A stretch of 64,000 nucleotides of DNA, taken from Fonticula alba ATCC 38817. Taxonomy: Eukaryota; Protista; Nucleariida. Position numbers and translations under genes: made by a program. Numbering within the stretch: the stretch's first letter is position 1; every line of letters begins with the position of its first letter. Below the pieces are notes generated by a model, which worked only from the letters and a program-made list of their open reading frames with translations, had not been told where the DNA came from and did no database searches. This document shows, piece by piece, positions 21,868-61,300 of this stretch. The stretch lies in the NCBI GenBank assembly GCA_000388065.2, contig KB932208.1; one strand, written 5' to 3'.

Positions 21868-22697
21868 CCCCCCCCCCCCCCCGGCCTATGCCCCGGGCGC
21901 GCCCACAGGTCAGTGGTCTTCCTTGGGTGAGGACACGGTGTTGGGGAGAGTGGACGCGAGTCGGAGCACGCCCCCCTTCTGCTCCAATGGCACCCCATCC
22001 GGCGATGGCGGCACATTCCACGCCTGCACGTTGGGAAGACACGCGGCGGGCTACTTAGCTTTTCTTGAGGGCAGCCCTTTTCAACAGCAAGGGGGCCCCC
22101 GGCCGGAGGGTGGGCAAGGGGAATGAGGCAGGGGGGTCGATCTTTCTCCCCTCGGTCCCGAACCAGGCCCCGGAAGGGATGGACGCCCAGGCGGCCCCCT
22201 TCGCCGAGGGAGAGGGAGAGAGAGAGAGGAGCGGAGAGAGAGGTGGCCACTGCTAGAAATCACCCGAGCGTGCTCACTCCTAGACCACCTGCCCCGCCAT
22301 CCACCCCCACTCCTCAGCGTCTCTCTCCCCTTTCTCCTCCTCCTATTGTCGCCTCCTTCGCGCCCCCCCCCCCTCCCTTGCCTCCCCCTCTCTCCGCACC
22401 TCTCCTTTTCACAAAAAAAGCCCCCAAGCGCCTTGCTCTCCGAACCCCCTTCACGGATACCGAACCAAGATTGGATCAGTACCACGCTTTCTAGCTTGCC
22501 ACTGGTGCGTTTCCACATGTACATGCCCGCGCGGGTCCCTCTGCAAGGGTGTGCATGCTCACGCGCCAGGCACCTGGGCACACACACACACACACACACA
22601 TATGCACGCACACACGCACACACGCACATGCACATGCACGCGCGCGCGCGCGCGCTGCCCTCTCTTCCCCATGCTGACCCCCCCCCCCCCGCCAGAG

Positions 22698-25600
22698 ATG
22701 GACTCGACAGCCTCTCTTGGGGGTGGCGATGGCCGGGACCCGCCTGGCCAGCCACCCACCACCGGGACCGATCCTGGCAATGAGGATCAGCAGTTGGTCC
22801 GCCAGAAGAAGAAGTCCCGTCGCCGGCACCGGCTGGCCATGGCCCTGCTGATGGGCGGCCGGTCGTCCTCGGATGGCCCCAACGGCGGGTCGCCGGCACT
22901 GGCCTCCACCGGGTCGCAGCTTCTCCACGCCCTTCAGTGGGCCACCAGCAGCGCGGCCGCCTGGCGCCCGCGTGGCAAGAAGTCCAAGTCCAAGACGTCA
23001 GCCAGTGGCGAGGGCCTGGCCAGCCCGCTGGATGACGAGGATCCCGCCTCGCCGGATGCCGGCGGGGACCTGTCCCCCCCGGTGTCCCCCACCACGGACG
23101 AGCCCCAGACCCCGCAGTCGCATGCGTATTCGCAGGCGACTCCCGGGTCTCGTCGGCCGCTGGCCGGCGTTGGCCAGGGGACCGGCCATGCGGCGGTGGC
23201 CGCTCGTGCAGTCGGCTTCTCCGGCGCCATTGGCGGGAATCTTGCCTCCCCATCGACGCCTTCCTCCGGCATCCGGCCCTCCTCGTCCATGATGTATGTC
23301 GGCTGCTGGCCATGTCCCCTTGCTCTCGCGCTCGCCCTGTCCCTTCGTTGCTCTTCTGACCTTTCCGCCGTCCCGCGGCCTGGCAGTGGTATCATGCGCT
23401 CGTCGACGCAGCAGCCCGGCGCGACGGCCAATGGGGACCTCCTGCTCCATACCGGCTCGTCGATGATCGACGACGATGACGACCTGGGCACCGTGGCGCT
23501 GAACGACTCGCAGCCGCCGCAAACGGCCGAGGATGCTCGCATCGCCGCGCTGCTGACTTTGCGCCATGGGCTTGGGGATTTCTCGGATGACGATTCGGAC
23601 GACGAATCGGACGATGGGGAGTCGGACGACGAGCTGTCACGGTCGGCCTCCCCCTCGCGGCCTCGGGCCATGCGCAACAAGGCCACCTCCGGGCGCGGAT
23701 ACGACCCCTATGGCCGGGAGGAAGACCGGATCCATTCCATGAGTTCCATTTCCATTCAAAGCCTCTTTTCCGACTCGGCCGGCAGCCCGGCCGGCCCGGT
23801 GGAGGCATCTACCGACGAGCTGGCCGCCGTGAAGACCGTGCAAAATATGCTGGCCGCCTCGTCCGGGCTGAGCCGGTCGCGGCAGAGCGTCGCCCAGGCG
23901 GCTGCCAGCGAGGACGCCAGCGGTGTGGCCGATGTCCTGTCTTCCGATGAGGAGGGCGAAATGGCCGGCACCGCGGAGGACGGGTCGCGGCTGTCGGCCA
24001 AGTTCGGCGCCGCTGGTCGCATGCTGGACCCGCATGAGTGTGTCATCCAGCTGCGCGAGCTGGTTTTGGCTTTGACCTTGCAGGATGACTACACCGGGTC
24101 CTTTGGCACCCCCTCCCCGGGGCACTCGCGCTCCGGGTCTCTGTCCTCCCCCGGCAGTGGGCCCGTTGCCCCGAGCAAGGGGGTGGTGCTTGCCACCGCC
24201 GAGGGTGGCCCGGTGCACTCGGGCATGCTGCTGCTCCGTGCATTGGAGATCTGCCTGCGCACGGAGCTCGGCGCCTGGACGCGCATGTTCATCGAGGCCA
24301 GCGGTGTCGAGGCTCTGGTCGATGCCATGGCCTCCATCGAGTCTGTGTCCAGCGGCGAGGGCGCCTTCTCGGGGAGTCGTCGACCTGGTGAGCCGGATCA
24401 CCAGCCGGCCTTCCTGAGCGCGCACGACTCCAGCGAGTTGGTGACGCGCTGCGTGTTGTGCTTGAAGGGTATGCCTTCCTCTGGGCGTGTGTATGTGTGT
24501 GTGGGGAGGGGGGGGGGGGGGCATGGCCATGTGCAAGAGTGCCGCGGCGGAGGAGGGGAGAAAAGGCCGCTTGCAAGGGGAATTCCCCATGTGCTCTTAC
24601 TGACATATCTCCCCTCTAGCTCTGATGAATAATCCGGTCGGCTTGCGGGCGGTCCTGTCGGATCCGGCCCTCTGTGCCAGTGCCCTCCGGTCGCTGGCCC
24701 TGTGTATCTCGGCGCGCAGCTTGCACGCTCGGATTCTCACGCTGGACATCCTGGCGGCCATCTGGTGCGTCGGAATGGGCATCCTTGACATCCTTTCTCT
24801 CTCTCTCTCTCCCGCTTCTCTGTGGCCACTTTGGTGCAGGCCCCTTTTTGAAATCTGCCCATCGACTCGCAGACGGCTTTGTCGAGCCATGAGACTCCCC
24901 CCCCCCCCTTCCCCCCCCCTATTCGGTGATGTGGTGCTAATCCCTTCCTCCCTTGTGATCGGGGCGCCGGTGGTGCCCCCAACTGCAGCTTCGTCCCGCG
25001 GGTGGGGACTGGACTGGTGTTGGACTCGCTGACGCACTTCGCGCATGTCCGGCGGGAGAACCGCCGCTTCCAGACACTGGTGTATGACCTGCGATTTGCC
25101 ACCAGTATCGACCTCAAGATCAGCCTCATGTCGCTGGTGAATGCGGTGTGCCACTCGTCCGAGGACTTGGCCGTGCGGTTGTACATCCGCAATGAGTGGC
25201 TGGATCTCGGCGTGTCGGATGTCTTCCCGGACTTGCTGGCTCTCGGGGACCGGTCTCTCCGGCGGCAGATCACCATTTTCGAGACCGAGCGCCTGGAGGA
25301 CGAGCATGAGGTCATGCAAATCTCCGACCTGAAGAATGTGGACTGGAGCGATCCGGTCCACATGGCGGCGTCCATCGACGCGGCGCTCCATGCCACCGGG
25401 GCCCACATGTGGTTCAATCGCATGATGCAGCAGCTGATGCTCTTCCCGATTGCGGTGGCGACGTCCATTTCGTCGGCCGATGTGGCTGTCGAGCGGCGCA
25501 TCCTCAACCAGTACTGGCGTCTGATGTACGAGGTGGCCTCGCAGGTGGCCCTGGTTCGGCCGACGGCCGAGGGGATCGCGCCCTTCCTGTCGGCGGCCGG

Positions 25601-27779
25601 CCTGTCCGAGGCGGGCCCCGGGTCCGAGGTGGCCGGGTTCATCGACGCGGCCGAAGAGGCGGCCCTCGAGGCCACGGCCGCTCTTGGCAGCGAGCCAGTG
25701 TTCAACCCACTTGGCCCGGCGGCCGACTATGCCGGGATCGCGGGGCAAACGTTCGACTACACGCCTCTCGGCCTGGATCTAGACATGGACCGGCTGCTGG
25801 CGCTGGTGGCGCGCAACGACCCCGTTGACTCGGCTGTCCAGGAGGTGCGTCCAATGGGCTGGCTTGTCAAAACACGCCCCATCAGCCTGAGGCGGGGGGG
25901 GGGGGGGGGCGGGGGCGGGGGAGAGAGGACATGTTGTTTGTCGCTTTCCCTTTCGCCACACCGATTGACCAGGAGGCAAGTGAGTCTTCGACTGACATTT
26001 GACGCCTTCCCCTTCGATGCAGCTGGCCTCCGTGCGTAAGCACCTGGAGGAGGCGTATGAGGATGCGCACGAGCTGCTGGCCAGTGGTGAGCCGCTGGAA
26101 ACCCCGGCATCCAAGGCCGCCTCGGCGGGCCCGCCCATGCCGGACATCGATCCGAAGAAGCCAGGTGCGTTGGTCGCCCCCTCTCCATGTGCCGGCATCC
26201 ATCTCCTTGCCTCCGATCCACCGGATAATCTGCCGGGTTCAGGGGCGGGGGGGGGGGGGAAAGAAAACAACGACTCGCGATCTGGTGTCCCAGCTCAGGA
26301 GCTGGTCCAGGACCCCCACGAAGATGATCGGCAGGAAGGTGTAGATGACATTCCACAGGGCATTGGACAGCGGGTCCCAGGCCAGCTGGCCACTGAAGCC
26401 ATTGTCAAAGGTGAAGAAGAAGCTCACCATGTACAGGGTCATGGTCTTGTACAGGGAGTAGAGGATGACCTTGCTCAGGCGCCGGTAGGTCCGGTGGCCG
26501 TGGACCATGAGCAGCGGCGCGAGGAAGGTGCGTGTGCCGGGGGGGGGGGGGGGGGGGGGGGGGGCAGTTCTTTCCATGACAGGGGACTGACAAGTGTTCA
26601 CCCGAGCGCAGTCGACTGGCAGAATGTCCTGGCTGCGCTGCCGGAATCTTGCTCGCCTTTGCGCCGACTGCTGTCGAGCCCCGACGTCCAAATGGCCGTT
26701 GGACAGGCCCTCAACCCGGCCACGGTGGTGGTCAAGCAGGCGACTCCTTCGGCCCCGGCCAAACCGGCAGCCGCTCCGGCACCCGCCCCACCGCCCCCGG
26801 CGGCGGCGCCGCCCCCTCCTGCAGCTGCTCCGCCGCCGCCTGCCCCGCCGCCGCCCCCGGGAGCTGGTGCTCCGCCACCGCCGCCGCCGCCGCCGCCGCC
26901 GATGATGGGCGGGGGACCTCCGCCGCCGCCGCCGCCGCCTGGCGGTGGGCCTCCGCCACCGCCGCCGCCCCCTGGTGGTGGGCCTCCGCCGCCCCCGGGT
27001 GCCGGGCCTCCGCCTCCGCCTGGCGCCGGTCCCCCGCCTCCGCCGGGTGGCTTCGGGCGGGCGGGGCCGGCCGCGCCGGCTGCCCCAGCGCATGTGCCCA
27101 CGCGTAAGATGCGCCCGGTGGCCTGGAACAAGTTGCCTCCCCGAGTGCTGTCGACGACCCTCTGGACGCAGCCAGCCGCGGCCGACACGCCAACCCTGCT
27201 GCCTCTGACCTCGGAGCAGCAGAAGAAGCCCTCTTCCGCCGGGACGGGCTCCGGCGCTTCCATCAGTGTGATTCCCCTCCAGGAACTGGAAGAGCTGTTC
27301 GGCGCGGAGGAAGTCGCCCCGGGAGGCGGCAAGGACGCCTCGGGTGCCGGCGACGGCGATGCCAGCAAGAAGAAGGATGCCGCCGGGGCGGCGGCCGCCG
27401 CCGCCGGGCCGCCGGAACTGAACCTCATTGATGGGAAGCGGTCCAACAACATGGCCATCACCCTGTCGCGGGTGCGGCATTCGAACCAGGCCATCCGGGA
27501 TGCCCTGCTCTCGGTCAATGATGCTCTGCTGGATGAGGCCACCCCGCGGTACTTCAATGGTGCCCTGCCGACGGATGAGGACATCAGCATCATCCGGACG
27601 CATGTTTCCCCGGATGGCAAGACCGATCCGAGCATGGTTGCTCGGCTGGCTCGCGTTGAAAGGTTCTTCTGGGACGTGTGCCTGAATGTGCCGAACTATG
27701 CGGAGCGTGTGGCGGCGCTGACCTTCCGCTGTCGCTTTGATGAGCAATCCTCCGAGGTGAAGAAGGTGCGTGCTGGCGC

Positions 27780-27853
<74 letters not shown>

Positions 27854-30192
27854 TTGTCGCTGTCGGTCATGTTAATCTTGCCGGAGGGGCAATGTTGCTA
27901 ACGCATCGTGTCGGTCCTGCGCATTTGCCTATGGCCGCCATCCACCCGTGGGTGTTCCCGTGTGCTGCATATGTGGTGCGCCTTTACATATACATGCACA
28001 TGTGTGACTCGCGCGCGTGTAGAATGTCGATGCCATCCTCCTTGCATCCAAGCAAACCTACTCGGCCAAGCACCTGCAGCGTATCATGCGCACGGTGCTG
28101 GAGATTGGTAACTACCTGAACTCCGGGACTTTCCGTGGCCAGGCTCAGGGCTTCCGGCTGGATGCGCTGTCTCGGCTGCCGGAGACTCGCGGTCGGCCGG
28201 CCTCCTTTACCCTGATGCATTACATTGCCCAGGCCCTGGGCAACCCGCCGGTGGTCCTGGCCGATGTGCAGGCCGACGGCGCGGACGGCACCCCGAGCAT
28301 CAGCATCGCCCAGCGGGAGCCACCGCGCGACAGTGTGGCCGACATCCTGCGTCGAGAGATGCCGGCTGTCGGGGATGCCAGTCGCCGTGCGTATACTCCC
28401 TTCCGTGCTCCTTTCTCGGTTCCCTCCTCCTTCTCTCTTTTTTTTCCCTGCCCCACATGTGCGCATACTGATTGCTCCTCTCTCTCTCTTTCTCTCTCCT
28501 TTTTAGTGAGTCTTCCTATCATTGAGAGCGAGATGGCCGAGCTTCGCCGCGGTCTGGCCGCCATTGTCAGCCTGCTGAAGATTCACTCTCCCTCTTGGGA
28601 GCTGCCGCCGGCCGAGGCCATGCTGTCCGGTGATGAGGCCGACGACGACAGTGACGGGCCCCTGTCCCCGAAGCTTGGCCTCACTTCGGGCGGCGTGGCA
28701 GGCACTGGTGGTCAGGGCGCGAGCGCGGCTGCCGCCGGATCTGGCGGCGCCGAGGCCGATGCGGCAGGTGTCGGCCATGCGCCAAGCAGCTCGGAGGACC
28801 GGTTCTTCACGGTCTTTTCGGAGTTTGCCCGGCGCGTGCACCGGCGGATCTGCACCATCGAAAAGTCCCTGGCGGACGCAAATAAGGGTACGCATGACAC
28901 ACGTGCCGTGGGCAGCCAATTTGCATTCCCTTCTTTGCGCCACCTCGCTCCCCCCCCCCCTCTTTCCTCCCTGTCGTCGCCCTCCTCCCCTCTTTTTTTT
29001 TTTCACGGACTGTCTCGGGTGTTATTTATTGGTTGGCTTTTTTGTTTCCTTCTTCTTTTTTTTTTGCTGACCCAACCGCCAATGTGGCTCACGGCCCATC
29101 ATTCGAAATGACCCAGCCTTCGAGCAGGTGGCCCTGCTGTATGGCGAGGACCCGAAGGCCACGTCAACCGAACAGATCTTCGGCCTGCTGAATGAGTTCA
29201 TGGAATCGCTTGCACGCTGCCACAAGGAGAATATTGCCGACTTCCAGCGGCGTCGTCAGCAGGAAGCCCGGGAGGCTCGCGCTGCGGCCGCTGCGGCCGC
29301 GGCCGCCGCCTCGTCGCCGGCGCTCGGGACGAGTGCCGGTGGGCGTCCTGGTGCGGCTGGGCGCCGGCGCCCGCCTCCGGGCAACATGCCGGATGACACC
29401 GGCGACGAGGGTCCCGGCGCCATGGACGATCTGATCGCCACCATTCACAGTGGCTCGGTCTTCCGTCGGACGAAGTCCCAGATGGGCCTGGCCCCACCTT
29501 CGCTGAATGCCGTGCGCAATCGCCTGGCTACCGGGGGCAATGCCTCCAGCGGGCCGGGCAGCGATGCGGGCAGCTCGTCGGCCGGCTCGTCACTGGTGGA
29601 CCTGGTGGCTGGCGGTGGCTCCGGCATGACCAGCGGCATTCCATCGACCGACAGCCTGGACAATGTGAGTCTGGAATCCTTCACAACGAACGTCGGCCAG
29701 CCGCGCCGACGCGCCACTCGGCGTCTCGGCGGCGGTCTGTCAGCCGGGTCCTCGGGGCTTGATCTGCTGGATGACCCGCTGTCGGTGGATCTCGGATCGG
29801 CGGGTGGCAGTGGAGCGGCCTCGGCTTCGGCTTCCTCGTCGTCGGATCCGCTGAATGACCCGCTGTCCTCGCCGACGTCACCCTCCGGCCGCGATGCAGG
29901 GCTCTGGTCGCTGGCGGCTGGAGGGGCCACCGGGGCGGGGCAGGCGCCGGCCGCCTCGCGAGTGGCTCGCGCTCGATCCACGGTGTCCCGGCAGCCGGGG
30001 GCCAATGGTGTCGGGTCGGCGGCGCCGCTTCTGCGGTCCCCCTCGCGGGCGTCTGGTGCGCTGCTTAATTCGGCGGCCATTGCTCGGCAGCGGGCTGCCG
30101 GAGCTCGGTCGAGAACGACCTCGACCGATGCGCCCGCCTCCGCGCCCGAGGATGATGCCCTGCAGGCGGCTTTCCTGGAATCGCACATTTGA
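22698..30192 (+). CDS. Diaphanous-related formin (GBD/FH3-FH1-FH2-DAD). Model join(22698..23293,23387..24468,24620..24764,24989..25844,26023..26164,26612..27765,28023..28386,28507..28887,29117..30192), with a possible extra exon 26243..26527
   Basis: GBD/FH3: LEICLRTELGAWTRMF, CLKALMNNPVG, ENRRFQTLV, LAVRLYIRNEW. FH1 poly-Pro at about 26780-27045. FH2: KMRPVAWNKLP, LIDGKRSNNMAITLSR, VLEIGNYLNSG..AQGFRLDAL..TLMHYIA, LYGEDP..FGLLNEF. DAD: GAMDDLIATIHSGSVFRR. All introns are phase-consistent; the true start is uncertain. Confidence 0.9.
26270..26527 (-). pseudogene. Isolated fragment (about 85 codons) of a P4-type ATPase (phospholipid flippase) C-terminal membrane domain, antisense inside a formin intron
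   Basis: Translates as FLAPLLMVHGHRTYRRLSKVILYSLYKTMTLYMVSFFFTFDNGFSGQLAWDPLSNALWNVIYTFLPIIFVGVLDQ, the hallmark FRFLxxLLLVHGxxxYxR..YxFYKN..FxGFSGQ..YN..FT.LP..G..DQ segment. I saw no other P4-ATPase exon (e.g. DKTGT) in the window. G runs flank both sides. Confidence 0.85.
27782..27852 (+). repeat. Poly-G homopolymer (71 nt) in a formin intron
   Basis: Directly visible run of G just after donor GTGCGT at 27766. Confidence 0.9.
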
Positions 30193-34626: not shown

Positions 34627-36043
34627 CGGCACGCGATACTACCCGGGCTATTCGGCCACCGGGAGTGGGGTCGACTTTGTTTCGCCGGCACCTCCAGCCT
34701 CGGCAAAGAGCCATGCGCAGGAGGCCGGCCCCGAGCACACCCCCCTGGTGTATCCGGCGGAGGGGATGACAGACGCGCATGAGCCCAAGCACGCCAGCGA
34801 GGCCGATCGCCGTCGTGCGTCATTCCGAGATCTCCTCACGCCAAGCTCTCCCTTCTCGCCGGAGCACATGGCCGACCTGGGGAGGCTGTCGGCGGGGCAT
34901 CCTTCCAGCGCAATGGGGGCCGGTGGGCCTTCGACGGGGATGTCGCCGGACCGGTGGTACCCCATGTGCACGATCAACCCGGCGGGTCCGGTGCCGGTGG
35001 CGGTCTCCCTGCACGAGGGGGCCCATGGGCATCTAGCAGGCCCAGCAGGGACCTCGGCCCCGGGACCAGGTGTGCACTATCCACCCCGGCAGCAGGAGCA
35101 GCAGCAGCAGCAGCAAGTGCACTATCAGCACGCTGCGAATGGGCACATGCCCCATTGGCTGGACGCCTCGGCCTCGAGGGAACCGTCGCAACAGCACGCT
35201 CCATCCCAACATCAGCCGCAGCAGCAACAGCAACAGCAGCAGCAGCAACATCATCAACACCACCACCAGCACCAACACCACCACCACCACCACCAACAGC
35301 AGCAGCACCACCATGCCGAGGCGGCCAACAAGGAATTGAGCCCGCTGCTTCATGCGCGCTCGGGGTCTTTCGAATTTGAACAGGCGCCGGCCGGCGACGG
35401 TGGGCAGTTCCACCTGGAGGCCGGGCACCGGCTGACGGTGTCGACCCTGGGAGGAGCCCCGGAGACCGTGGCAGACACCCCGGCCGAGGAGGGGCCGGAG
35501 ATGGGGGGCGCCCAGCTGCACCCGATTCCAAAGGCCTCCATCAGCGCGAATGGGGCACTGCCGGCCTCGCCTACCGGGAGGGACTCGATGGGCAGCTGCC
35601 CGTCCGAACCGCAGCAACGGTATGCTGCTTCGCGGCACCACTTTTCGCAGCCATGCTCGATGTATCCCCCGGATCATGGGGGCCATTATGACCAGCAGGA
35701 GCACATGCGGCAGCCTCTCCAGCACTTCCTGTCGGGGGAGCAGCAGCAGCAGCAGCAGCAGCGGCAGCAGCAGCAGGATCGGGACCCGAAACAGCCGCCA
35801 ACCGGTGACTCGGCTCCCTTCCCCAAGATGATGGAGCCCGGGGCCCCGTCAGCAGTGGTAGCTCCGGGGGATGGAGGGGACACCAGCAGCTCGGCATGTG
35901 CCACCCAGGCTGGGACCTATGCCCATGGACCGGACGTATCTATGCCCTCAGCGAACTCCCAGAACCAGCAGCGCGTATACCAGCAGCCGGTCTACCAGCA
36001 TCAGCACCAGCCGCAGCACCACGAGCCAGAGATCCGCCTCTGA
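32688..36043 (+). CDS. C2H2 zinc-finger transcription factor (two fingers, USV1/RGM1-like) with poly-Gln/His C-terminus. Model join(32688..33936,34259..34313,34477..36043)
   Basis: [62 protein letters not shown] donors at 33937 (phase 1) and 34314 (phase 2) with CAG acceptors at 34258 and 34476 join the finger ORF in frame to the Q/H-rich ORF 34496..36043. Confidence 0.8.
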
Positions 36044-41000: not shown

Positions 41001-43477
41001 GGCCACGCTCGTCGCCGCACGCCGGCACCATAAAACCGGGGTGATGCGCAAGAGAGCGAAAAGGGTCTGATCGGACACGGCCCCAGAAGGGCTCGACATC
41101 GCAGGCTCGTTCCAGGGGTCGTGTGGCCGAGGGGCGCGCCTGGGAGGTGTGCGGGAGGGGCAGGGCGGGCACGGCCGCTCGGCTCTCCCGGGCAGCGCAG
41201 GGTGCGTGTGCCCCGGGCCGTCGCACTCGGAACATAGGCCAGTAGTTTACTTCGGCCGGCCGGGAGGCGCAGGCGCGGGGGGGAGTGGGGGGGGTACACC
41301 GACGCGCACTCTGGCGCCGGGCGACTGCCGGCCCCGATGCCCGTCGGGGGCGCAGGGGACGGGGCGCGGGGGGGGGGGGGCGGCGCGACGCGGGCATGCC
41401 CGTCTCCCAGGCCGGCGGCCGCCTGTTTGCCGCGGTGGTTTGTTATTATCCCTCCCCCCCGGAAAGGGGAAAAATTATTAATCGTCTAATAATGAATGTG
41501 ATATATTCTCGGCTGGGGACGAAGTAGCAGCACGCCGGCTGTCCGGTATAACGACCGGGGCGAGAATGGCTCATCCTGGCGAAGGGGGGAGGCCGGGCGG
41601 TCCCCGGCACTCACACGAAGAGCGGCCCTGGCTCCACGTTTCGCCGGAGGGGGGGACCTCGAGTGTCCCGCTCTCCCGGCCTCGCCCTCGACCTTGGACC
41701 GGAGCCTTGCGCCCCGGGTCTCCTTCCGCCTCCGGGAGGAGGGCGGAGAGGGTGTCCCTTGCGTGTGCAGGGCTCTCGGTGGGGACCGAGTGAGCGGGCG
41801 CATTCTTCGCCTGGGAATGTCTCCCGCCTGTTCCTGGGCCGGTGTTTCCACCGGTGGAGGGGGGGCCCTGAGGATAGGGGGGGGGGGGGGGGGGCCGGCC
41901 TGTCATGCGAGGCGGGCCCCGCCACTCACCGCGAGGGATGCGCCTTTCGGCGCGTGTGCGGGGGGGGGGGCGGCGGGGCGTTCGTGCCTCACCTTTTTCG
42001 TGTGCCCCTAGGGAGAGCCCACCGCTGCGTGGGTCATTCTCCCCGGGGAGGGGGGGGGAGAAACGGCGCGGGCGGACAAGGGGCAATTGTTTTTATCTGT
42101 GGTCTCAATGGGAGCCAGGGCACCGTCCGCCCGGACAGGCGTCAAGGGCTGCGAGTGCGAGTCTGCGCGAGCATGCGCGCGCCGGCGGCGCCCCGTTGCC
42201 CTGTTTCACGCTTCCCTGACCGATGCTGTGCTTGCTCGTTTCCGGCGGCCGCGCGTCCCCTCGCAAGGTTGATACCCGGCGCGCGCGGACCATTCCGTCG
42301 GGCACGCGAATCGCTCGAGTCCTCCCCGGGTCCTCGCCCCTGTTGCGGGAGGCGACCTACGTTGGCGGGGCGCGGCATGCAAGGGCGGGCGCACAGGAGA
42401 GGGGTAGTCGGTAAGGGGTATATTATTGCGCGGGTGCGGAGGTCCACCCTCCCCCCCCCCCCCCCCGGGGGGGGTAGCTGAGAGGGGGCCGAGCGGCGAG
42501 AGGCCGGGGGGCGGGACGGGACAGAGGGGGGGCTTGTCGGCTTCCAGCCGCCCGGCTCCTTCTTCGCGCCCCTCTCTCCATCCCCACCTGGTACTTGGGT
42601 TGACGCATGCATGCGGTCCGCGGGGCCCTGTTGCCTGGTGTGTGTGTGTGTGTGTCTGTACATGTACTGCCCCCCCCCCCTCCCCCAAACACCCCTCATC
42701 TCTGGGCCGCGCGCGTTGCCGCAGTTCCAGGGGCATATGCGCGGGACGCAGGCGGGTGGGGGACGGGGAGCCACCAAGGAGAGAGGCGCACACGGGGGGG
42801 GGGGGGACAGGGCGCAGTCGTGTCCCTCGCCTTCTTTCCCTCGAGGCGTCCCCCCAATTTGCCTCTTCCAAGGGGCTTTCGGTGGTGCCTGGAGCGCCTG
42901 GCATGGGTGCACGCGTGTCCGTGAGGCAGGGAGGCGCCGGTGCCGGCCTCTCGGGGTCGGGATGTTCGCCAGGACCAGCCCGGCCTCGATGCCGTGTGCC
43001 CAGGGGGGTCACTGTCGAACCAGCCCCGGCCGGAGGCCTCCCGGCCCGGTGAGCCGGACCCGGACGACCTCCTCTCCCTGCCGGCCTTCAGCAATCTCGG
43101 TGCGTGCGGGCGGCCGGGCCGGGCCCTTGCTCCTGGCCCTGCCCCCCCCCCCCCCCCCCCCCGCCTGGGGAGGAGATATATGAGGACCCGACCCGGCTGC
43201 GGAGAAGGCATGGGACGGTAACCCTTTTTTAAGAGCTTTCTCCTGGTGCGTCTCCCCCTGCTGCGAGTGGGAGCGAGAGCCCTTTTTTTTGCCACCTTCT
43301 TTCTTCTCACCCCCTTGTACGCGTGTGTGTGTGTGCGCCCGACTTTCCCTCCTCCCTAACCCGTGTGCCTTCTCGCCATTTCTCTCTCTCTCTCTCTCTC
43401 CAGTTCCCCTCCCCCCTCCCCTCCCCCCCCCTCGCACCCCCCCACCCCTCCTCTCGCCTGCCGCGCTCTTCAGAATC

Positions 43478-46400
43478 ATGAAGTTCCCGCGCTGGGCCAC
43501 CCTGTGGGCGGTGCTGATGGCTATCTTTGCCATCGGCCTCCTCGCCCCGACCACTTCTGCCCAGCAGAAGTGTGGCCCCAACCACTGTTACCCGGCTGAG
43601 TGTAACGGTCACGCCACCCAGGTGGACTTTGTGTTTGTTTACGACTTCTCCGGTTCCATGAGCCCCACCTGGAACAACCTCAAGGCCGTCGTGCACCATT
43701 TCTTCGACGCGGTCTCCCGCGACAACATGGACGCCACCATCACCATTGTCGGTTATGCGTACAGCAACTCTAAGAACACCCTCCCTCGGATTGCTGTTCC
43801 CACCACCGCCATTACCCCGGGCAACCTGCAGTCCTTCAAGAACTCCTTCGACACGACCACCTTCCCTGGTGGCTATGAGCCCGGTCTGATGGCCCTGGAG
43901 CTTGCCTCCAAGGGTCACACCTACCCCGGCTTCAACATCAATTTCCGTGATGGTGCCCGTCGTGTCTTCGTCCTCTTCACCGATGAGGACTCCGATCCGA
44001 ACACCCTCTACGGTACCAACCAATATGGTGCCTTCCCCACTCATCCGTATGAGACCTTGACCTGCCTCAGCCGGAACACGGCTCCCGCTTCGGATAGCCG
44101 CTTCGTGGCTTCCAAGATGGAGATCGACCGTGTTGGTGCTCACCTGGTTCGCACCGACTCCTTCGTGCACTTCGTCGTGTCCGATCAGACCCCCAACAGC
44201 ATCTACCGTTGCTTCTCGCGCTTCCAGTTCGGCTCGTCTGCCATCAACTACGGCAACAGCAACTTTGTGGACATCTCTTCCGTGTCTGCTGCCCTGGCCA
44301 ACGATCCCCACGCCAAGGATTCGCTCCAGGCCTACATGGTCAACCGTGACATCCTGTCTCGCACCTGGAACATCGACAGCACCACCTCCTCCGGTTCTGG
44401 TACTGCCTTCGTCAACACCATTCTGCAGGCCATCCAGCAGTCTGTCGGTACTTGCCAGGACTGCACCGAATACAAGTGCTCCTCTGGTGCCAACAAGGTC
44501 TGCCTGTCGCCTGAGCACATTTGCGATTGCGCTGGTGTCCGCCACGGCCCTCACGTATGTACCTTTTTTTCCCTCTTCCCTTTCATTCTTTTTGATCCTT
44601 CTTTGTTGGGTTTTTTTTTTGCCACTTCGCCATTGGGCCGCCTGGTTTCTCTAACGACTGCATATACTTCTCTTGGACACATGGGAAATGTGCTTCAACA
44701 AAAAAACCCCATCCTCTCCTTTCCTCTCTCTCTCCCACCGATGGTAGGTTCGTGATTGCGAGAACAAGTGTGTCCTCCCCCAGAACGCCAAGGTCGTGGA
44801 TTGCGCCGGTGTCTGCGGTGGTACCGCCACTCTCAATGGCTGTGGCTTCTGCGCTCGTGATGATGCCGGTTGCCGCTCCGATTGCCGTGGTCGCACCTTC
44901 CCCAACGTCGCTCCCCCGGGCGTCGTTTCCACCGTCTGCCCGAGCTGGATCAAGCCCGAGGACATTGCCTCTCTCTACACCGAGGTCGTGATCGCGGCTC
45001 GTCTCACCTTTGCCGGCACCTCCACTCGTGATATCACCTCCTTTGTGTGTGAGTGGTTCAACAAGCACAAGCGCCACCTCACCAGCACCCAGGAGTGCAT
45101 CTTCGACGCGGCCAAGTACGCCAACGCCGCCGGTGTCAGCGTCGATTCCGCCGCCACCGAGTTCATCAAGCTCGACGGCTGGCGCCGGTTCAGCGGTGTC
45201 TGCCGCAACGCCCCGGTCAGCATCATGGCCCCGCCGCCTGATGCCTGTGGCCAGTGCCGTCAGAACCTCTACGAGCCTGCTCCCTTCTGCCAGCTGGGCT
45301 GCAATGGCCAGTATGCCACTTCCCAGGCCGCCCTCCACGAGATGGACAACTGCAACTCTTGCGTCGGTCCCGACGTGAAGGCCGCCAACCCCAACACCTG
45401 GCGCGATCTCAAGAAGGACGACTGCGGCGTTTGCAATGGCGGCAACAGCGCCAAGAACCAGTGTGGCGTGTGCTTCGAGGACAAGACTCTGGACGGCTGT
45501 GGTCAGCCCAACTGCAAGAAGCTCTTCTGCTCGATCGATTGCAACGATGTCCCCTACACCGCTGTGGACCTGATGCAGCACCACATTGACCCGTGCGGTA
45601 ACTGCGTGCGCATCCGCAACCCGGATGGCTCCGACTACATTGTCGAGGGCAAGCCCCAGCTCCGCCATCCTCGCTGCCTGGACGACTGCATCGGCACTCC
45701 CTACATGAAGGCGGAGACCTGCGATGATGCCCTCACTCCGGCCGATGTGCTTGACACCCCCTCCAAGCTGGACTCCTATTGCCACAAGGCTGCCAGCCAC
45801 TGGACCAACCCCTGCAACAAGTGTGTCCCTCTGGAGGCCACTTCGAAGGCTTGCGTTCGTGATTGCGCCCGCGCCTGGGGCGGTGACTTCTTCCTCGACA
45901 AGTGCCAGGTCTGCCGCAACCCGGCCGACAAGGAGGAGGACCATGAGGATCGCTGCCTCTTCGATTGCAAGAACACTCCCTACCTGGAGTCTGCTGGCAA
46001 GCCCCATGTCTACACCATCTGTGGCCATTGCGTGGCCAAGGACTCGCCGCTCCTGGATGAGCACATTGACTCGTGCGGCCGGTGTGTCCTCAGCCCGGGC
46101 TGGAATGCCGATGATTGCAAGAAGGACTGCTCCGGCGTCTTCCGCCTCGTGACCGACCCCAACGCCCATGTGCTGGATTCCTGCGACGAGTGCCACAACC
46201 CCAACGATCTGTCCAAGTACAACCGCCTGCTTGATGAGTGTGGTCTGTGTGTTACTCTCGAGGATCTCGATGAGAATGGCCAGACCCCCCCCTCGGCTGG
46301 TGCTATTGTTGATGACCTCGGTGTCTTCTGCGGCTGCAAGCCCAAGGCCCAGCCGGTGATGCTTTCGCTGGCTTCCGGCTCTGGCTCCAACAATGGCCAT

Positions 46401-50884: not shown

Positions 50885-53800
50885 CACACACACATCCAGG
50901 AGGTGGCCCCGGTCCAGCCGCGCTAGGTGCCAGACGCATATCGGGCTCGGGCGAGGGAGGGGCGCAGCGCAGGAGGCGCAGGGCAGACCCGCTCACGGCC
51001 CGCTTGTCTCTCTCACACCGCGCGCGCCAGGAGCGCAAATGCGGGTCGATATTTCCCGGACATCTCTCTCCTGCTCCGGCCCCGGGCATGTGGAGATGCA
51101 CACCCCCATCCCTGGGCCGTTGAATTCCCCCATACCACTGCCCTGCCTCCGCCCCCTCTTCCGCGCTGCGCACCAGCGCCGGGGCAGTGAGACAATATGG
51201 GGGAGTGAGAGAGGAGGAAAGTGGGAAAGACCATGCCTCCCCCCACCCCCCTACCCCCGCCCCCAGCCTCCACCTGCGCAGGTCCGCGCAGCCTTGTGAC
51301 CGCCCACGCCAGGGAGGATGGCTCCGGGGTGAATACTCCCGCGCTGGGCGGGGCGTCGGCGGGGGAGAGAGGGGGGAGATCACTCGGCGCCAGGAAGACC
51401 CGTTTAAAAAAGCCCCAGCCCCGATGAGCGAGACACGCCCGGGGAGAATGGCTGGCGGGCGGGAGGCCGGGGGGGGGGGTCACGCGCGCTCGCATGCCCT
51501 GGCCCGCTGTCCGGGGCGCGTGGGTGGGGCGTTGAGCAGGCCTGGCGCCGGGTGGTGCCCGGCCCACGGTGTTGCCAGAAAGGACGCGGGTCGGGGGAGA
51601 GCAGTCCCTCCAGATCGTCGCCTGGAGAGAAGAGCACCAGGCTCACCCCCCCCCCCCCCCCTGTGCGCGCCCCCGTCCGGTGTGGCCCCAAGGCCGGCCC
51701 CCTTCCTCCGGTGTGGCACGACGAAGCCCCTCCCCCCCCTCCCCGCCGATGCTCCTCGGGGAAATAGACCCGCGCGAGTGTCGTCTTTGTTGGGACACAT
51801 GAAGATATGCGACCAGCGGAGCCGGCGGGACGATGCTGCCGGGGGCGAGGGGCGCGCGGGGGCCTCGAAACGCTCGAGGAGGCACTCAAATCCCGGGCGC
51901 GCTCCAGGCCAGGCGCCGCCTATCACACAATCGCCGGGCGGCGACGGGAGGCCGGTGAGGAGGGGCCCGGGGACAAAGGCTGGAATATGCCACGACGTGC
52001 TGGGCGGGAAAAACCGCGGCGCTCCCGGCCAGGGCGCCGGAGTGGCGGCCCTACACACACACACACACACACACATGACCGGACCGCCGCCAAGGGTGCG
52101 GGGGGGGGGGGGGAGGTCTTTCCCCAGCCCCACAGGCTCGAAGGGCGGGCCGGGCGGATGGACACCATAACAATCCAGGCTGGGGGGCGGATGAGATGCA
52201 ATCGAAAACAAAAACATCGGCCCTCGCCAGGTGTCCACGATGTCGTGCGCCCGCCTCCTGAGTCCGAGAAGCGTCGTCAGTTCGCGGACAGGATTCCCGG
52301 GCCGTGGATTCGCCCGGGCCTCGCACCGGAACGCGCCGGGGGGGGGGGTATGGCGGCCCTTCTGCCCGCCCGCCTCTCTTCCGGACCGCGGCGCTTTGTC
52401 CCGCGTTGCTTAGCACACGTCTGCAAAAGGGAGTAACGCGCGCACCGGTCACCCGGGGGCGGGGGGGGGGGGAAGACCCACCGGAGTGGGGATGGAGTGC
52501 GGCATGAAATGCCCCAGGCCTGATGATCCGTCGTAGAGTGGAGAGGGCGTCGAATGCTCGGTCTCCCCCCCCCCCCCCCGGCCCCCCCTGCTGCAACAAC
52601 AGACACTCGCCCCAGGCCGGAGGGCCCGCACCCGGGCTGAGGGGCTGCGATCTGGCAGGAAGGGCCACTGTTGGACATCAACACGCCGCCTGCCAAGCCG
52701 TGGGCTACACCGAACCGCGTCAGCCGGTCGGGGGCGTTCTACCTTTTCAGTCGCGCCATTTTTAAGGCGGCGATCCAGAACCACCGGAACGGGGTCCGCG
52801 TTCGGCAACCCGGGGGGGGGGGATTCGGCGCGATCAGCCCGTCCGGCGGGGCGGGCCCGGGGGGGGGGGGGGGCTGCCCCGGCGGCCCGGGGGGGGGGGG
52901 GGGGGGGGGGGGGGCGGCCAGCCGCAAGGAAAAAAGCAAGCCGGCCGGCGCTCCCCCGGGACGAGGGGGAAATCTTTCCCCCGACGCACGGCAGCTGCCA
53001 CTGTTGAATGACCCTTTCCACGAAGGAAGAGGCTGGCTTCAAGACGCGACACAATTCCGGCCAGCCCTCTCGGCCAACCAGGCCCCGAGACAAGCCACGC
53101 AGATCCGACGGCAAAAGAAACACCATAAGTGGGATGATGTTTCGAATGGCATTTCGAGATTTGCACGGGCGTGGGTGTGATTTGTGCCGGTGATCTCGTC
53201 GGGTGATCGGTCGCGCCTCGGAGATCGCCTGGTCTCCATCATGGCCCCGTTTCCGGCGCGGCCTCCCCCCTCACTCTGGGGATGGGAGAAGTTTGCAGGT
53301 CCCAGCCCGGGAGAGAGGTCGGCGGCCTCGTTCAAGAGACCCTCGGACCGAGGCGCATGTTGCGGCAGGCTCAGGGTTTGGACTTGAAGCTATCCACAAT
53401 GAAGGGGCGCCGCCTAGGCGCCGGGTGACCAGGCAAAGAGGGGAACCAGGCGCTCGACCCAATCATCCCCTCCCCCCCCCGCAGAGAACGCCCGGGAGTA
53501 TGGTCGCCGGGCGGGGGCCATAATGTCAGGACAGCAGCCAAGGGAAAGGGCGACCCCCGCCCTCCCCCCGCCCCCGGCTGGAAACCGCCCGCCGGGACAG
53601 GGGGGACCAAAAAAAGGAAGAAAAAATAATGCCACACATCATGGCCCACCGGGAGAACGAAGCAATACAGGGGTGGACGGGCCTCTTCCCTTCATGTTGG
53701 ACCTGCGCCCCCCCCCCTCAGAAAACGGGCGAGAAGGGAGAAAACAGCCGCGGGACGGGGCGTCGCCAGCGACCGGGGGTTTTCCCACTGCTCCGCGGAG

Positions 53801-58352: not shown

Positions 58353-61300
58353 TCAGGCCAGGCCCTGGTAATAGGCGGTCAGGGCCTTGGGCGGCTGGTA
58401 GCCCGAGCGGAGGGGCGAGGAGCGGTTGACTTGCACCGAGCATGGCTGCCCCAGGAGAGCGAGCTTTGGCAGTGGCGAATTGGATTTGTCAGTGCGCGTG
58501 TGTGTACGTGTGGCAGGGGCATTTTGAGCGCCACATGCGTCCGGCGTGCTCGTATGCGGCGCGTACCTGATCCGGAGAGCTGGTTCGGGGGACAAAGTAG
58601 GCAATGTGAGGGGAGATCTTGTGGCACGCCTCGAAGATGGCATCACTGGTGCAGGCCGCCGGCATGGGGGATGTCAGTGGGGGGGGGGAAGGGGACGCAG
58701 GAGTCAAGGCGCGCGTGATGGAAAGGGGAGAGGGGAAGGCCCCGTCAGGACGCACGCCGGAGGGGAAACCATGTTCACGCAATCAAACTGCCCGCTGCCA
58801 ATCAAATTGTCCCGGTGGGCATTGATATGCCCCCGGGAGTTCGACGACCCGGCATATACCACGCCGCCCCATGGCGGACTGAGGAAGATGATATCCGCCT
58901 TTGGGGGGGAGTGCAAAGGGATGGTGGCGGGGAGATGGGGAGGAGGCAGGTCAGAGGGGAGGCCAGCTAAAGTCGGCACAGTGGCGCCCACATGCGCACC
59001 TCAAGGGTTCCATTGTGCGCCAGCTCGAGGAAATCACCCTGGATGAAGGTGATCCGGTCATGGACACCATACACCCGGGCGTTGTTCTCGGCCATGGCCA
59101 GGCGGAAGGGATCCAGATCGATGGCGATGACTGGAATGGGTGAGTGGGGCGCAGGGGGCGCGGAGGGTGAGGCACGGAGCACGATGGTACCACAAGCCCC
59201 GAAGGGCGGGCCGAAGAGGGGAGAATCGAAGGTGGACGTACCTTGTGCGCCCAGTCGAGCAAAGGCAATGGAGTTGCCGCCAGCACCGCAGAAGGGGTCC
59301 AGCACGATCAGCCCTGGGCGCAGACACTGCTCGTCCAGCGAGAAGGACCCGAGACAGCGCTGGGCAATGTCGAGGGCGATCTTCTCCGGGGTCACCGAAA
59401 ACCAAGACTCCCGGTCCATATGGATTCCCTGGTCGAAGCGGGAAAAGAGCTGGTAGCGCTGGGCAAAGTACTTCAGCATGGCTGGCTCAAAGTGCTCGCG
59501 CTTGGCAAGGACCAGCTCGCGGTAGCGAGCCTGAAAGGCAGGCGTCCCGCGGTGGGCGAAGCAAAACTCGGCCACGGCGTCGGACGGAGAGCCGGCCCCC
59601 CGTTGACGAGTGTCGCGAGTGGATCGGCCTCTCTGGCCGCCGGTCTGGCCGTTTTGCCGGGGAGCCGAGGAGCCGCCACGCGATGGGGCATCAGATGCCG
59701 CGGACCAGCCACCGGGAGTGGAGGTGCGATTGCCAGCCTGGTGGTTGTCCGCATCATCGTCATCATCACCAGCACCATGGTTGTTGCCATACTCCTCGAC
59801 GCATCCTTCGGAGGAGTCGGCATCGGAGTCGGCATCGGAGTCGGCATCCGAATCACTGTCCTCACTCGCACTCGAGCAGTCAGACATGGAGTCGGAGCCG
59901 TCGGAGTCGTCGGCCTCTTCGGAATCGGTCAGCATGGTGTCACTGTCCTCGTCCCCGGAGGTGGCATCCGTGGCGTCGCTGCTGTCGGCGTCGATGTCAT
60001 CGCTGTCAGCCTCATCACCAGACGCGGTGTCCTCCTGATCGTCCTCGGCCTCCTCGCGCATGCGACGACTGTGCCGAATGGCACGCGCCCGGCGCCAAAC
60101 ATTGTACTCATCCAAGCCCTTGGTCTTGAGGAGATACTCATCATCCATGAAGTCTACACGGCGGCGGGAGGTCAGCGAAGGAAAACAGCAGGGGAGAGAG
60201 AAAGAGAGGGAGGGAGAGAGAGAGGGAAAAGCACAGGAAGCATGGGCCTCGTGGGTTTATGCAGTGCGCACCCTCATCGCAGCCGGCCTTTCGCGTGTCG
60301 ACGCGCTGCTCGACGATGCGCACGCCGCGCGAAAAGTATGACGAGAAGTCGCCGACACTGGAGCCGGCCACCTCAGCCTCGGTGGCATCCAACGAGGACA
60401 CCGGCAGTGAGGCCTCGGTGTCGGAGTCCGAATCGAAGACAATGTGCAGCCGGCGAACCTGGGCATGCGAGCGGAAAAGCGGCGCCACGGTCAAACTCTC
60501 CCCTTCATCCGACCGATCGTCCTCCAGCTCGTCGAGCAAATCCTCCGGGATGCTGGGGTCCTGCTCTTCATCGGGGGCAGTCCGCTCGATCAATTCGGCC
60601 GAGGCTTGCTCATAGTCGGCGATGATTGAGTGGCGACTGCCCGGGGCCGATGAGGACACGGCGCCCGGGGCCATGGTGGCCGCCAGGACGGGGCCCACAT
60701 CCGGCAAGGTCGGCAGATTCGGATATCCCGGGACCTGAACCGATGGCAGGGGGAAGGCCGGGGGCAGGGGCATCGGCAAGGGAGCAACCGCCGCTCGGCG
60801 GCGCTTGGCCGTGTGTGTCAGAGGAGGCTCCGCCCCCGACGGGGAAGAGGAGTCATCCTCAGAGTCAGAGTCATCTGAGGAATCACTGTCGGCCGTGAGG
60901 ATCGAGAAGGAGATCGAGGGCTTGACCTTGTCGGACTGATCGGAGTCGGATTCCGACATGGGGTCGGGCTCGAACTTCGGCCCGGGCGTGGGCAGGGGCG
61001 CATGCTTGGGCTCGAGATTGGCCGGTTGCTTGGCATGGCAGGCGGATGCCGGCGCCGCCAGCGAGCGAAGATGCGTCGCCTGGGCCAGCAGGAGTTCCTC
61101 CATGGCGGCAAGGCGTCTTTCCGTGGACTTTGCCAGGGACGCCTGGCCCTCGAGCAGCTGAGCCAGCTGTTCTTGCGTGCGATCGACCGATGCTTGAAGT
61201 CGGGCAAGAGCATCGGCCTCATGGGCAGCGGTATCCTGGACCTGTTGCTCTAGGCGCCGAGCCGACTCCAAGGTTAGGAAGCCCACCTTCTCGGAGCGCA

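What the first reader, a model, noticed from the sequence alone, without database searches (positions are those of the whole stretch)
26243..26564. Orphan flippase (P4-ATPase) exon antisense inside a formin intron, possibly exonised into the formin
Seen: the formin intron 26165-26611 (447 nt, much longer than most introns here) carries on the minus strand an uninterrupted 80+ codon P4-ATPase segment, bracketed by G runs (26243-26259, 26539-26564). Its upstream flank reads ACGCAC|C-TTC-CTC, one base from the acceptor ACGCAG| that would give the conserved R-F-L. That same base makes a perfect plus-strand donor AAG|GTGCGT at 26528. With the plus-strand acceptor TTCAG at 26242 (or CCCAG at 26293), 26243..26527 becomes a phase 1-1, in-frame 285-nt cassette with 78- and 84-nt flanking introns. 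Inference, three options: (a) a captured gene fragment exonised in antisense, adding about 95 novel residues between FH3 and FH1; (b) a dead insertion in an intron; (c) a misassembly through G runs. The open antisense frame alone is weak evidence, because in-register antisense frames are often stop-free at high GC.
Basis: partly seen in the sequence, partly recalled or inferred. Interest (0 to 1): 0.75.

Follow-up and report, generated by a model that had tools for sequence, protein, structure and literature searches.

The report
Foreign flippase patch in formin intron
The "orphan flippase exon" is a near-exact partial copy of an intact flippase gene elsewhere in this genome, stitched to a second foreign scrap inside a formin intron; it is most likely an error of this draft assembly, not a working gene part.

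Summary
Window 26260-26538 (-) encodes a P4-ATPase segment (PhoLip_ATPase_C, E 2.9e-27), inside the intron that the public formin model also uses (26165-26611).

It is not an orphan exon. Window 26302-26548 is 246/247 identical to an intact multi-exon P4-ATPase on contig C3. It covers 11 nt of that gene's intron, its 10-G run and the first 75 codons of a 170-codon exon. Window 26233-26302 comes from a third contig, C17. The insert is therefore a two-piece mosaic.

The only mismatch, at 26528, is the base that creates the plus-strand donor. The public 1931-aa formin model skips the whole stretch.

I found the same kind of patch elsewhere:
- two more in this window;
- one in the NOG1 intron, already noted by this scan on other DNA (s1-065554);
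- two foreign copies that end exactly at contig ends next to N gaps.

Three pieces are about 250 nt long. Most differences from the donors, and all those within the near-exact pieces, change a base to the neighbouring G/C-run base, and one copy decays progressively into G.

Most likely explanation: a gap-closure or contig-extension artefact (about 0.68). The rival is a real, very recent template-switch insertion at a G run (about 0.25). Exonisation is at most 0.03. Read mapping or PCR across the intron would settle it.

The parts
26022..26164 (+). Formin exon upstream of the intron (ends ...PDIDPKKP).
   Evidence: The public model P0003 contains this peptide directly followed by VDWQNV.
26165..26232 (+). 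Native left part of the formin intron, starting with the GTGCGT donor.
   Evidence: Has no other match in the genome. Sequence.
26233..26302 (.). Foreign piece 1: a copy of contig C17:237725-237800, including its own G run (window 26247-26259).
   Evidence: Identity is 92-98%. All differences lie just before the G run and are changes to G.
26303..26527 (-). Foreign piece 2a: the first 75 codons of a 170-codon P4-ATPase exon, copied from contig C3.
   Evidence: The whole piece 2 (window 26302-26548) is 246/247 identical to C3:685746-685998. Pfam PhoLip_ATPase_C positions 13-94.
26528..26548 (-). Foreign piece 2b: the last 11 nt of the donor gene's upstream intron plus its 10-G run. Position 26528 is the only mismatch (window G, donor C). 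It destroys the donor gene's AG acceptor on the minus strand and creates GTGCGT on the plus strand.
26539..26564 (.). 26-G run. It is the donor's 10 G merged with either a native intronic G run or a poly-G read tail.
   Evidence: The donor has only 10 G.
26231..26237 (.). TGCCGGG, repeated at 26535-26541. This 7-nt direct repeat sits at the two ends of the patch (microhomology or overlap).
   Evidence: family D1.
26565..26611 (+). Native right part of the formin intron, ending in the GCGCAG acceptor.
   Evidence: The public model resumes at 26612.
42856..43175 (.). Second two-piece patch in the window. 42856-43015 copies C1:4087083-4087242 (99%) and 43012-43175 copies C2:1987400-1987562 (-) (97%).
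   Evidence: All differences lie in or next to the C run and are changes to C.
52677..52924 (.). Third patch: a copy of about 250 nt of C1:1670571-1670822. The first 116 nt have 1 difference. The last 136 nt keep the same spacing but are progressively replaced by G.
   Evidence: In 31 of 44 substitutions the window copy has G.
27134..27228 (+). Formin exon segment that is itself copied elsewhere. A 95-nt exact copy ends exactly at a contig end before an N gap at C3:2771853-2771947.
58790..58948 (.). Source of a corrupted copy at C6:432592-432750, which also ends exactly at a contig end before an N gap.
   Evidence: In 18 of 20 substitutions the C6 copy has G or C.

Best explanation
The 316-332 nt between 26233 and 26548-26564 is a foreign patch put into the formin intron by the assembly process. 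It is not a gene part.

The true intron is probably about 115-131 nt and contains one G run, like its neighbour. Short-read coverage fails at such runs.

I infer that a gap-closing or contig-extension step bridged the break with poor-quality reads from other loci. One read of about 250 nt came from the P4-ATPase gene on C3. A shorter read came from C17. A poly-G tail or run would have supplied the overlap with the native G run.

Shown:
- the mosaic structure of the insert;
- the intact donor gene on C3;
- the recurrence of such patches elsewhere in the assembly;
- their error signature;
- foreign copies sitting at gap edges.

Inferred:
- the assembler step that produced the patch;
- that the patch is absent from the organism's DNA.

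Either way the piece has no flippase function and is not part of the formin protein.
For: 1. The donor is intact and keeps its copy. C3 carries Cation_ATPase, Hydrolase and PhoLip_ATPase_C 13-173 and 170-251 in order on the minus strand. The window copy is 246/247 identical to it.
2. The insert is a mosaic of two unrelated loci, C17 and C3, joined at a single shared base.
3. It belongs to a recurring class. About 72 kb surveyed held three embedded patches in this window, and a targeted look confirmed one more in NOG1.
4. Piece lengths cluster at 247, 254 and about 250 nt, which looks like a read length.
5. Differences from the donors lie in or near homopolymers, apart from the decayed halves of the two corrupted copies, and mostly change a base to the run's base. 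Examples are 26528 C to G, TGCGC to GGGC in the C17 piece, T/A to C in the C2 and PUS7 pieces, and a 136-nt stretch smeared to G with the spacing preserved (31 of 44 substitutions). This looks like base-calling decay rather than evolutionary divergence.
6. Foreign copies end exactly at contig ends before N gaps. One is a 95-nt exact copy of the formin exon. The other is a 159-nt corrupted copy.
7. N gaps in this assembly are usually flanked by G/C runs, so runs are where the assembly fails.
8. No clear older patch-like copy turned up: the 80-90% matches I inspected were the two corrupted copies and a coding paralogue, and the rest (multi-copy or low-complexity by their hit lists) I did not inspect.
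Against: - No reads were available, so absence from the DNA is not shown.
- The junctions at 26232/3 and 26302/3 have only 5 nt and 1 nt of shared sequence. Reads or read pairs carrying those joins must therefore have existed. I cannot name the algorithm that would abut them.
- Removing the patch leaves a clean intron of normal size, and the patch ends carry a TGCCGGG repeat. That is also what a real microhomology-mediated insertion looks like.
- The mismatch at 26528 survived consensus building, which could mean a physically separate copy.
- The read-length argument rests on three pieces.
- The sequencing platform and assembler of this genome are not known to me from any tool result.
Confidence: 0.68

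Rival explanations
1. The patch is a real, very recent insertion. A replication stall or break at the intron's G run was repaired by template switching or capture of ectopic DNA. The nascent end annealed to the G run of the P4-ATPase intron (TGCC plus G run, 14 nt or more of homology) and copied 247 nt. It then switched to C17 at a 1-nt homology, copied 70 nt, and returned through CCGGG. The result is a dead, non-coding patchwork that is spliced out with the intron.
For: - The insert is embedded precisely between native flanks, with a 7-nt TGCCGGG repeat at its two ends.
- The donor pieces have one end in or near a homopolymer.
- A mosaic of fragments from different chromosomes with 0-5 nt microhomology is typical of complex break-repair insertions (established knowledge, not tested here).
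- Error-prone repair synthesis could explain mutations near the runs.
- The NOG1 patch junction carries an 8-9 nt inverted repeat.
Against: - The near-exact pieces are essentially 100% identical to their donors outside homopolymer neighbourhoods, and I saw no clear older, diverged examples.
- Three pieces are about 250 nt long.
- One patch decays into G with the spacing preserved. No known mutational process does this.
- Foreign copies sit at contig ends beside gaps.
Confidence: 0.25
2. The insert is a real insertion that has been exonised. Positions 26243-26527 would be spliced into the formin mRNA as a 285-nt in-frame antisense cassette. It would use TTCAG| as acceptor and the |GTGCGT donor created at 26528, adding about 95 residues between FH3 and FH1.
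For: - Both splice sites match the local consensus. GTGCGT is the donor of the formin and NOG1 introns and of the C2 donor gene's intron; the P4-ATPase intron has GTGCGC.
- The plus frame is open.
- The flanking mini-introns would be 78 and 84 nt.
- The only substitution in 247 nt is the one that makes the donor.
Against: - The public 1931-aa model skips the region, and the cassette peptide is absent from it.
- Codon-position GC in the plus frame is non-coding-like (GC3 0.51).
- The reverse complement of the local acceptor consensus (CTGCGT) is one base from the donor consensus. The change is a C-to-G next to a G run, as in other patches, so the coincidence is modest.
- This reading requires the insert to be real in the first place.
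- No transcript data could be searched. I did not build or search the joined spliced model; exons were handled separately by reference.
Confidence: 0.03
3. The patch is a gene-fragment-carrying mobile element (Pack-MULE or Helitron-like transduplication) that landed in the intron.
For: - It is a mosaic of fragments from unrelated loci.
- One piece of the second patch belongs to a repeat family (C1 is about 89% identical to C8:301.5 kb).
Against: - There are no terminal inverted repeats, no Helitron ends and no shared element backbone among the patches.
- The TGCCGGG repeat is part of the donor sequence, not a duplicated target.
- Each patch is unique.
Confidence: 0.03

Closest known systems
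Gap-closure or contig-extension errors in short-read draft assemblies (chimeric or mis-recruited reads placed at low-coverage homopolymer sites)
   Same: - The foreign pieces have read-like lengths.
- They lie at or near G/C runs.
- Some sit at contig ends beside N gaps.
- Their differences from the donors look like base-calling errors.
   Different: - I could not identify the assembler or the step responsible.
- Two junctions lack any usable overlap, so the exact artefact mechanism is inferred.
Templated or captured ectopic insertions at DNA breaks (filler DNA, MMBIR/FoSTeS, complex insertions as described in yeast lacking Dna2)
   Same: - The insert is a multi-fragment mosaic from different chromosomes.
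- Junctions share 0-5 nt, plus one homopolymer-length microhomology.
- The donor loci are left intact.
   Different: - The near-exact copies are about 100% identical to their donors and I saw no clear older, diverged ones.
- Pieces cluster at a fixed length of about 250 nt.
- Smearing to G and placement at gap edges are not expected from biology.
P4-ATPase (phospholipid flippase) genes
   Same: 75 codons are identical to the start of the C-terminal membrane domain of the organism's own P4-ATPase on C3.
   Different: - The window copy has none of the other P-type ATPase domains.
- It lacks a working acceptor site.
- It stops in mid-exon and lies antisense in another gene's intron.
Exonisation of intronic insertions (for example antisense Alu exons)
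   Same: Antisense orientation, consensus-like cryptic splice sites and an open frame.
   Different: - The public gene model does not include it.
- There is no coding signature in the host frame.
- No expression evidence is available.

Membership tests
Functional P4-ATPase gene or exon | A complete P-type ATPase domain set in one gene (E1-E2/Cation_ATPase, HAD hydrolase, full PhoLip_ATPase_C). | tested here: not met
   The window copy covers only profile positions 13-94 of 251. The full set is present at the donor on C3.
Functional P4-ATPase gene or exon | The piece corresponds to a whole exon with intact splice sites. | tested here: not met
   It starts in the donor's intron and stops after 225 nt of a 510-nt exon. 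The AG acceptor is changed to AC.
Cassette exon of the formin | Consensus acceptor and donor sites and an open, phase-compatible frame. | tested here: met
   TTCAG|G at 26242/3 and AAG|GTGCGT at 26527/8. The cassette would be 285 nt and the frame is open.
Cassette exon of the formin | Inclusion in a transcript or gene model. | tested here: not met
   The public model P0003 joins ...KKP to VDWQNV... and the cassette peptide is absent. RNA-seq data were not available.
Cassette exon of the formin | Host-like codon composition. | tested here: not met
   GC3 is 0.51 in the plus frame against 0.75-0.85 in the formin exons.
Break-repair templated or captured insertion | An intact donor elsewhere, and junction microhomology. 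| tested here: met
   Donors lie on C3 and C17. Junction homologies are CCGGG, 1 nt, and TGCC plus the G run.
Break-repair templated or captured insertion | The insert is physically present in the genomic DNA. | not testable with these tools
   No reads were available. A protein-word search for independent assemblies found nothing.
Assembly artefact (foreign read patches) | A recurrent class with read-like lengths, a base-calling error signature, and occurrence at contig ends and gaps. | tested here: met
   
Assembly artefact (foreign read patches) | Junctions lack normal read support. | not testable with these tools
   This needs the raw reads.
Gene-fragment-carrying transposon | Terminal repeats, target-site duplication and multiple copies with shared ends. 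| tested here: not met
   The patch is unique and has no terminal inverted repeats.

The most novel reading that the evidence does not exclude
The patches are real. In this amoeba, whose genome carries a G or C run about every 750 nt, stalled replication at these runs would be repaired again and again by copying 50-250 nt from other run-bearing loci. That would scatter fresh gene fragments into introns and intergenic DNA. One such fragment in the formin intron would sit one base away from, and now have, a usable donor site, making it raw material for new exons.
Probability: 0.2. Interest if true: 0.55.

Novelty: not a real feature. Interest (0 to 1): 0.1.

Why it matters
The main value is as a warning. 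This draft genome, which earlier notes of the scan call Fonticula alba (not verified here), contains many short foreign patches at homopolymer sites, perhaps on the order of a thousand by rough extrapolation. First-pass readers keep flagging them as orphan exons, scattered genes or trans-splicing candidates. Recognising the class prevents false reports. Its marks are:
- a near-exact copy of an intact gene elsewhere in the genome;
- a length of about 250 nt or less;
- one end in a G/C run;
- differences from the donor that change bases to the run's base.

If read data showed the patches to be real, they would document an unusually active template-switch repair process tied to G runs. That would be of moderate interest for genome-instability research.

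Tried and rejected
- **Independent assemblies.** I looked for called proteins that span the junctions with two word-index protein searches. They returned only distant P4-ATPase fragments or nothing, so they gave no independent support either way.
- **Fixed patch size.** I tested whether every patch totals about 320 nt (70+247 and 160+164). The NOG1 case (254 nt plus an 82% repeat-family member) does not fit, so I dropped the idea.
- **Misassembly purely through a collapsed poly-G node.** Rejected, because two junctions are not in G runs and the path passes the C17 G run without exiting.
- **Missing exon at the parent locus.** Rejected.
- **RNA gene in the intron.** No Rfam match at E of 0.1 or better.
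- **Transposon ends.** No terminal inverted repeats were found.
- **Literature.** Two searches for the assembly method and the homopolymer content of this genome found nothing usable.
- **Spliced cassette model.** I did not build or search the joined model. Exons were handled one at a time by reference.

Full report
**What is there.** The window is GC-rich eukaryotic DNA. Earlier notes of this scan name the organism as Fonticula alba; I did not verify that. The assembly is 31.3 Mb in 214 scaffolds.

Positions 25002-26039 encode a formin FH3 domain, and 26614 onward encodes FH1 and FH2. Between the exons ending at 26164 and starting at 26612 lies a 447-nt stretch with a GTGCGT donor and a GCGCAG acceptor. 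A public 1931-aa protein (P0003, 99% identical over FH3) reads ...PDIDPKKP directly followed by VDWQNV....

On the minus strand, 26260-26538 is open and matches Pfam PhoLip_ATPase_C positions 13-94 at E 2.9e-27.

**What the segment is.** A search of the organism's own genome and local alignments show that the insert is a mosaic of two foreign pieces.

- Window 26302-26548 is 246/247 identical to C3:685746-685998.
- At that locus the sequence lies inside an intact multi-exon P4-ATPase gene on the minus strand. Cation_ATPase, HAD hydrolase, PhoLip_ATPase_C 13-173 and PhoLip_ATPase_C 170-251 follow one another in order.
- The copied piece is not an exon unit. It comprises the last 11 nt of the donor's intron, that intron's 10-G run, and only the first 225 nt (75 codons) of a 510-nt exon.
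- Window 26233-26302 matches a third scaffold, C17:237725-237800, including 10 nt upstream of that locus's own G run.
- The two pieces meet at 26302/26303 with one shared base.

The prediction that the parent locus would lack this exon is refuted, and "orphan" does not apply.

**The single mismatch.** The only difference from the donor is at 26528 (window G, donor C). In the donor this base belongs to the AG acceptor. In the window it yields GTGCGT on the plus strand, which is the donor hexamer at the formin and NOG1 introns and in the C2 gene; the P4-ATPase intron has GTGCGC.

The coincidence is smaller than it looks. The reverse complement of the local acceptor consensus (CTGCGT) is one base from the donor consensus. 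The change is a C-to-G 11 nt from a G run, the same direction as every other difference I found in the near-exact pieces.

**G runs are not special brackets.** The window has 95 homopolymers of 9 nt or more, 85 of them G or C runs. The neighbouring formin intron has one, and N gaps in this assembly are usually flanked by them.

Without the patch, the intron would be about 115-131 nt with a G run of about 16, like its neighbour. The patch ends carry a 7-nt direct repeat, TGCCGGG, at 26231-26237 and 26535-26541.

**A recurring class.** I surveyed about 72 kb against the whole genome and found the following.

1. A second two-piece patch at 42856-43175. It copies C1 (160 nt, 99%) and C2 (164 nt, 97%, an exon end plus donor site plus C run). 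All differences lie in or next to the C run and are changes to C.
2. A third patch at 52677-52924 that copies C1:1670571-1670822. The first 116 nt have one difference. The last 136 nt keep the same spacing and anchor words, but in 31 of 44 substitutions the window copy has G.
3. A 95-nt exact copy of formin exon 27134-27228 that ends exactly at a contig end before an N gap on C3.
4. A 159-nt copy of window 58790-58948 on C6, with 18 of 20 substitutions to G or C, that also ends exactly at a contig end before an N gap.

It is 254 nt and 252/254 identical, and both differences are changes to C inside a C-rich end. So the scan had already met this phenomenon on other DNA.

**Interpretation.** Four features point to a technical origin.

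- Three pieces are 247, 254 and about 250 nt long, which looks like a read length.
- The near-exact pieces are essentially identical to their donors except near homopolymers. There the changes go to the run's base. In one patch they amount to a progressive decay into G with the spacing preserved, which looks like base-calling failure and fits no mutational process I know of.
- Foreign copies sit at contig ends next to unresolved gaps.
- I saw no clear older patch-like copy. The 80-90% matches I inspected were the two corrupted copies and a coding paralogue; the others, multi-copy or low-complexity by their hit lists, I did not inspect.

My best explanation (about 0.68) is that coverage failed at the intron's G run and a gap-closing or extension step bridged it with poor-quality reads from other loci. 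The assembler step is inferred, not shown.

**Rival.** A real, very recent template-switch or captured-DNA insertion at a G-run break (about 0.25) also explains several features. These are the clean embedding between native flanks, the TGCCGGG repeat, the homopolymer at one end of each donor piece, and the multi-chromosome mosaic. It does not explain the decay into G, the read-like lengths or the gap-edge copies.

I could not resolve the two readings, because no reads are reachable with these tools. Two protein-word searches for independent assemblies found nothing.

**Exonisation.** This reading would need the insert to be real and also spliced in. Against it:

- the public model excludes the region;
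- the plus frame has GC3 of 0.51, against 0.75-0.85 in the host exons, while the minus frame keeps the donor's 0.93.

I put it at 0.03 or less. I did not build or search the joined cassette model; exons were treated separately by reference.

**Verdict.** The striking interpretation is not supported. The feature is a non-functional copy of part of an existing gene and most likely an assembly artefact. Interest is low, apart from its use as a warning about this assembly.

Noticed in passing
window 42856-43175: A two-piece foreign patch (C1 160 nt plus C2 164 nt) lies just upstream of the integrin-like gene that starts near 43478. The C1 piece belongs to a repeat family that also occurs at C8:301.5 kb (89% identical), near the 'giant MED16 intron' of note s1-065898.
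   Followed up: partly
window 52677-52924: A copy of about 250 nt of C1:1670571-1670822 whose second half is progressively replaced by G at preserved spacing. Some of the G runs in this assembly (for example 52812-52822, 52859-52873 and 52889-52914) may therefore be technical rather than real.
   Followed up: partly
L006 1054-1148 (C3:2771853-2771947) and L015 593-751 (C6:432592-432750): Foreign copies of window sequence end exactly at contig ends before N gaps. The first is exactly 95 nt long, which would equal K-1 for a K=96 de Bruijn assembler (that link is from memory and was not verified).
   Followed up: partly
L011 3984-4201 (NOG1 intron, C2:1583483-1583700): A 218-nt element next to the PUS7 patch has an 82% copy at C2:3016093-3016305. 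The junction with the PUS7 piece forms an 8-9 nt inverted repeat (GCTCGACC...GGTCGAGC). Its nature is unknown.
   Followed up: no
window 35183-35313: A unit of about 107-125 nt has more than 60 copies genome-wide at 75-85% identity, often in tandem (for example C3:1651796-1652079 and C6:1104054-1104457). I did not determine whether it is a satellite or a coding repeat.
   Followed up: no
window 22578-22654, and 405-494: Short stretches with dozens of matches at 80-91% across all scaffolds. The first lies in a His/Thr-rich (CA-repeat-like) stretch at the formin 5' end. They are probably microsatellite-like low complexity.
   Followed up: no
window, whole: The window has 95 homopolymers of 9 nt or more, 85 of them G or C runs up to 71 nt long. 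Five of the six N gaps in the window abut or lie within a few nt of such a run.
   Followed up: partly
window 22670-30190 (+): The formin public model is 1931 aa, with an N-terminal extension of about 610 aa before FH3 that has no Pfam match.
   Followed up: no
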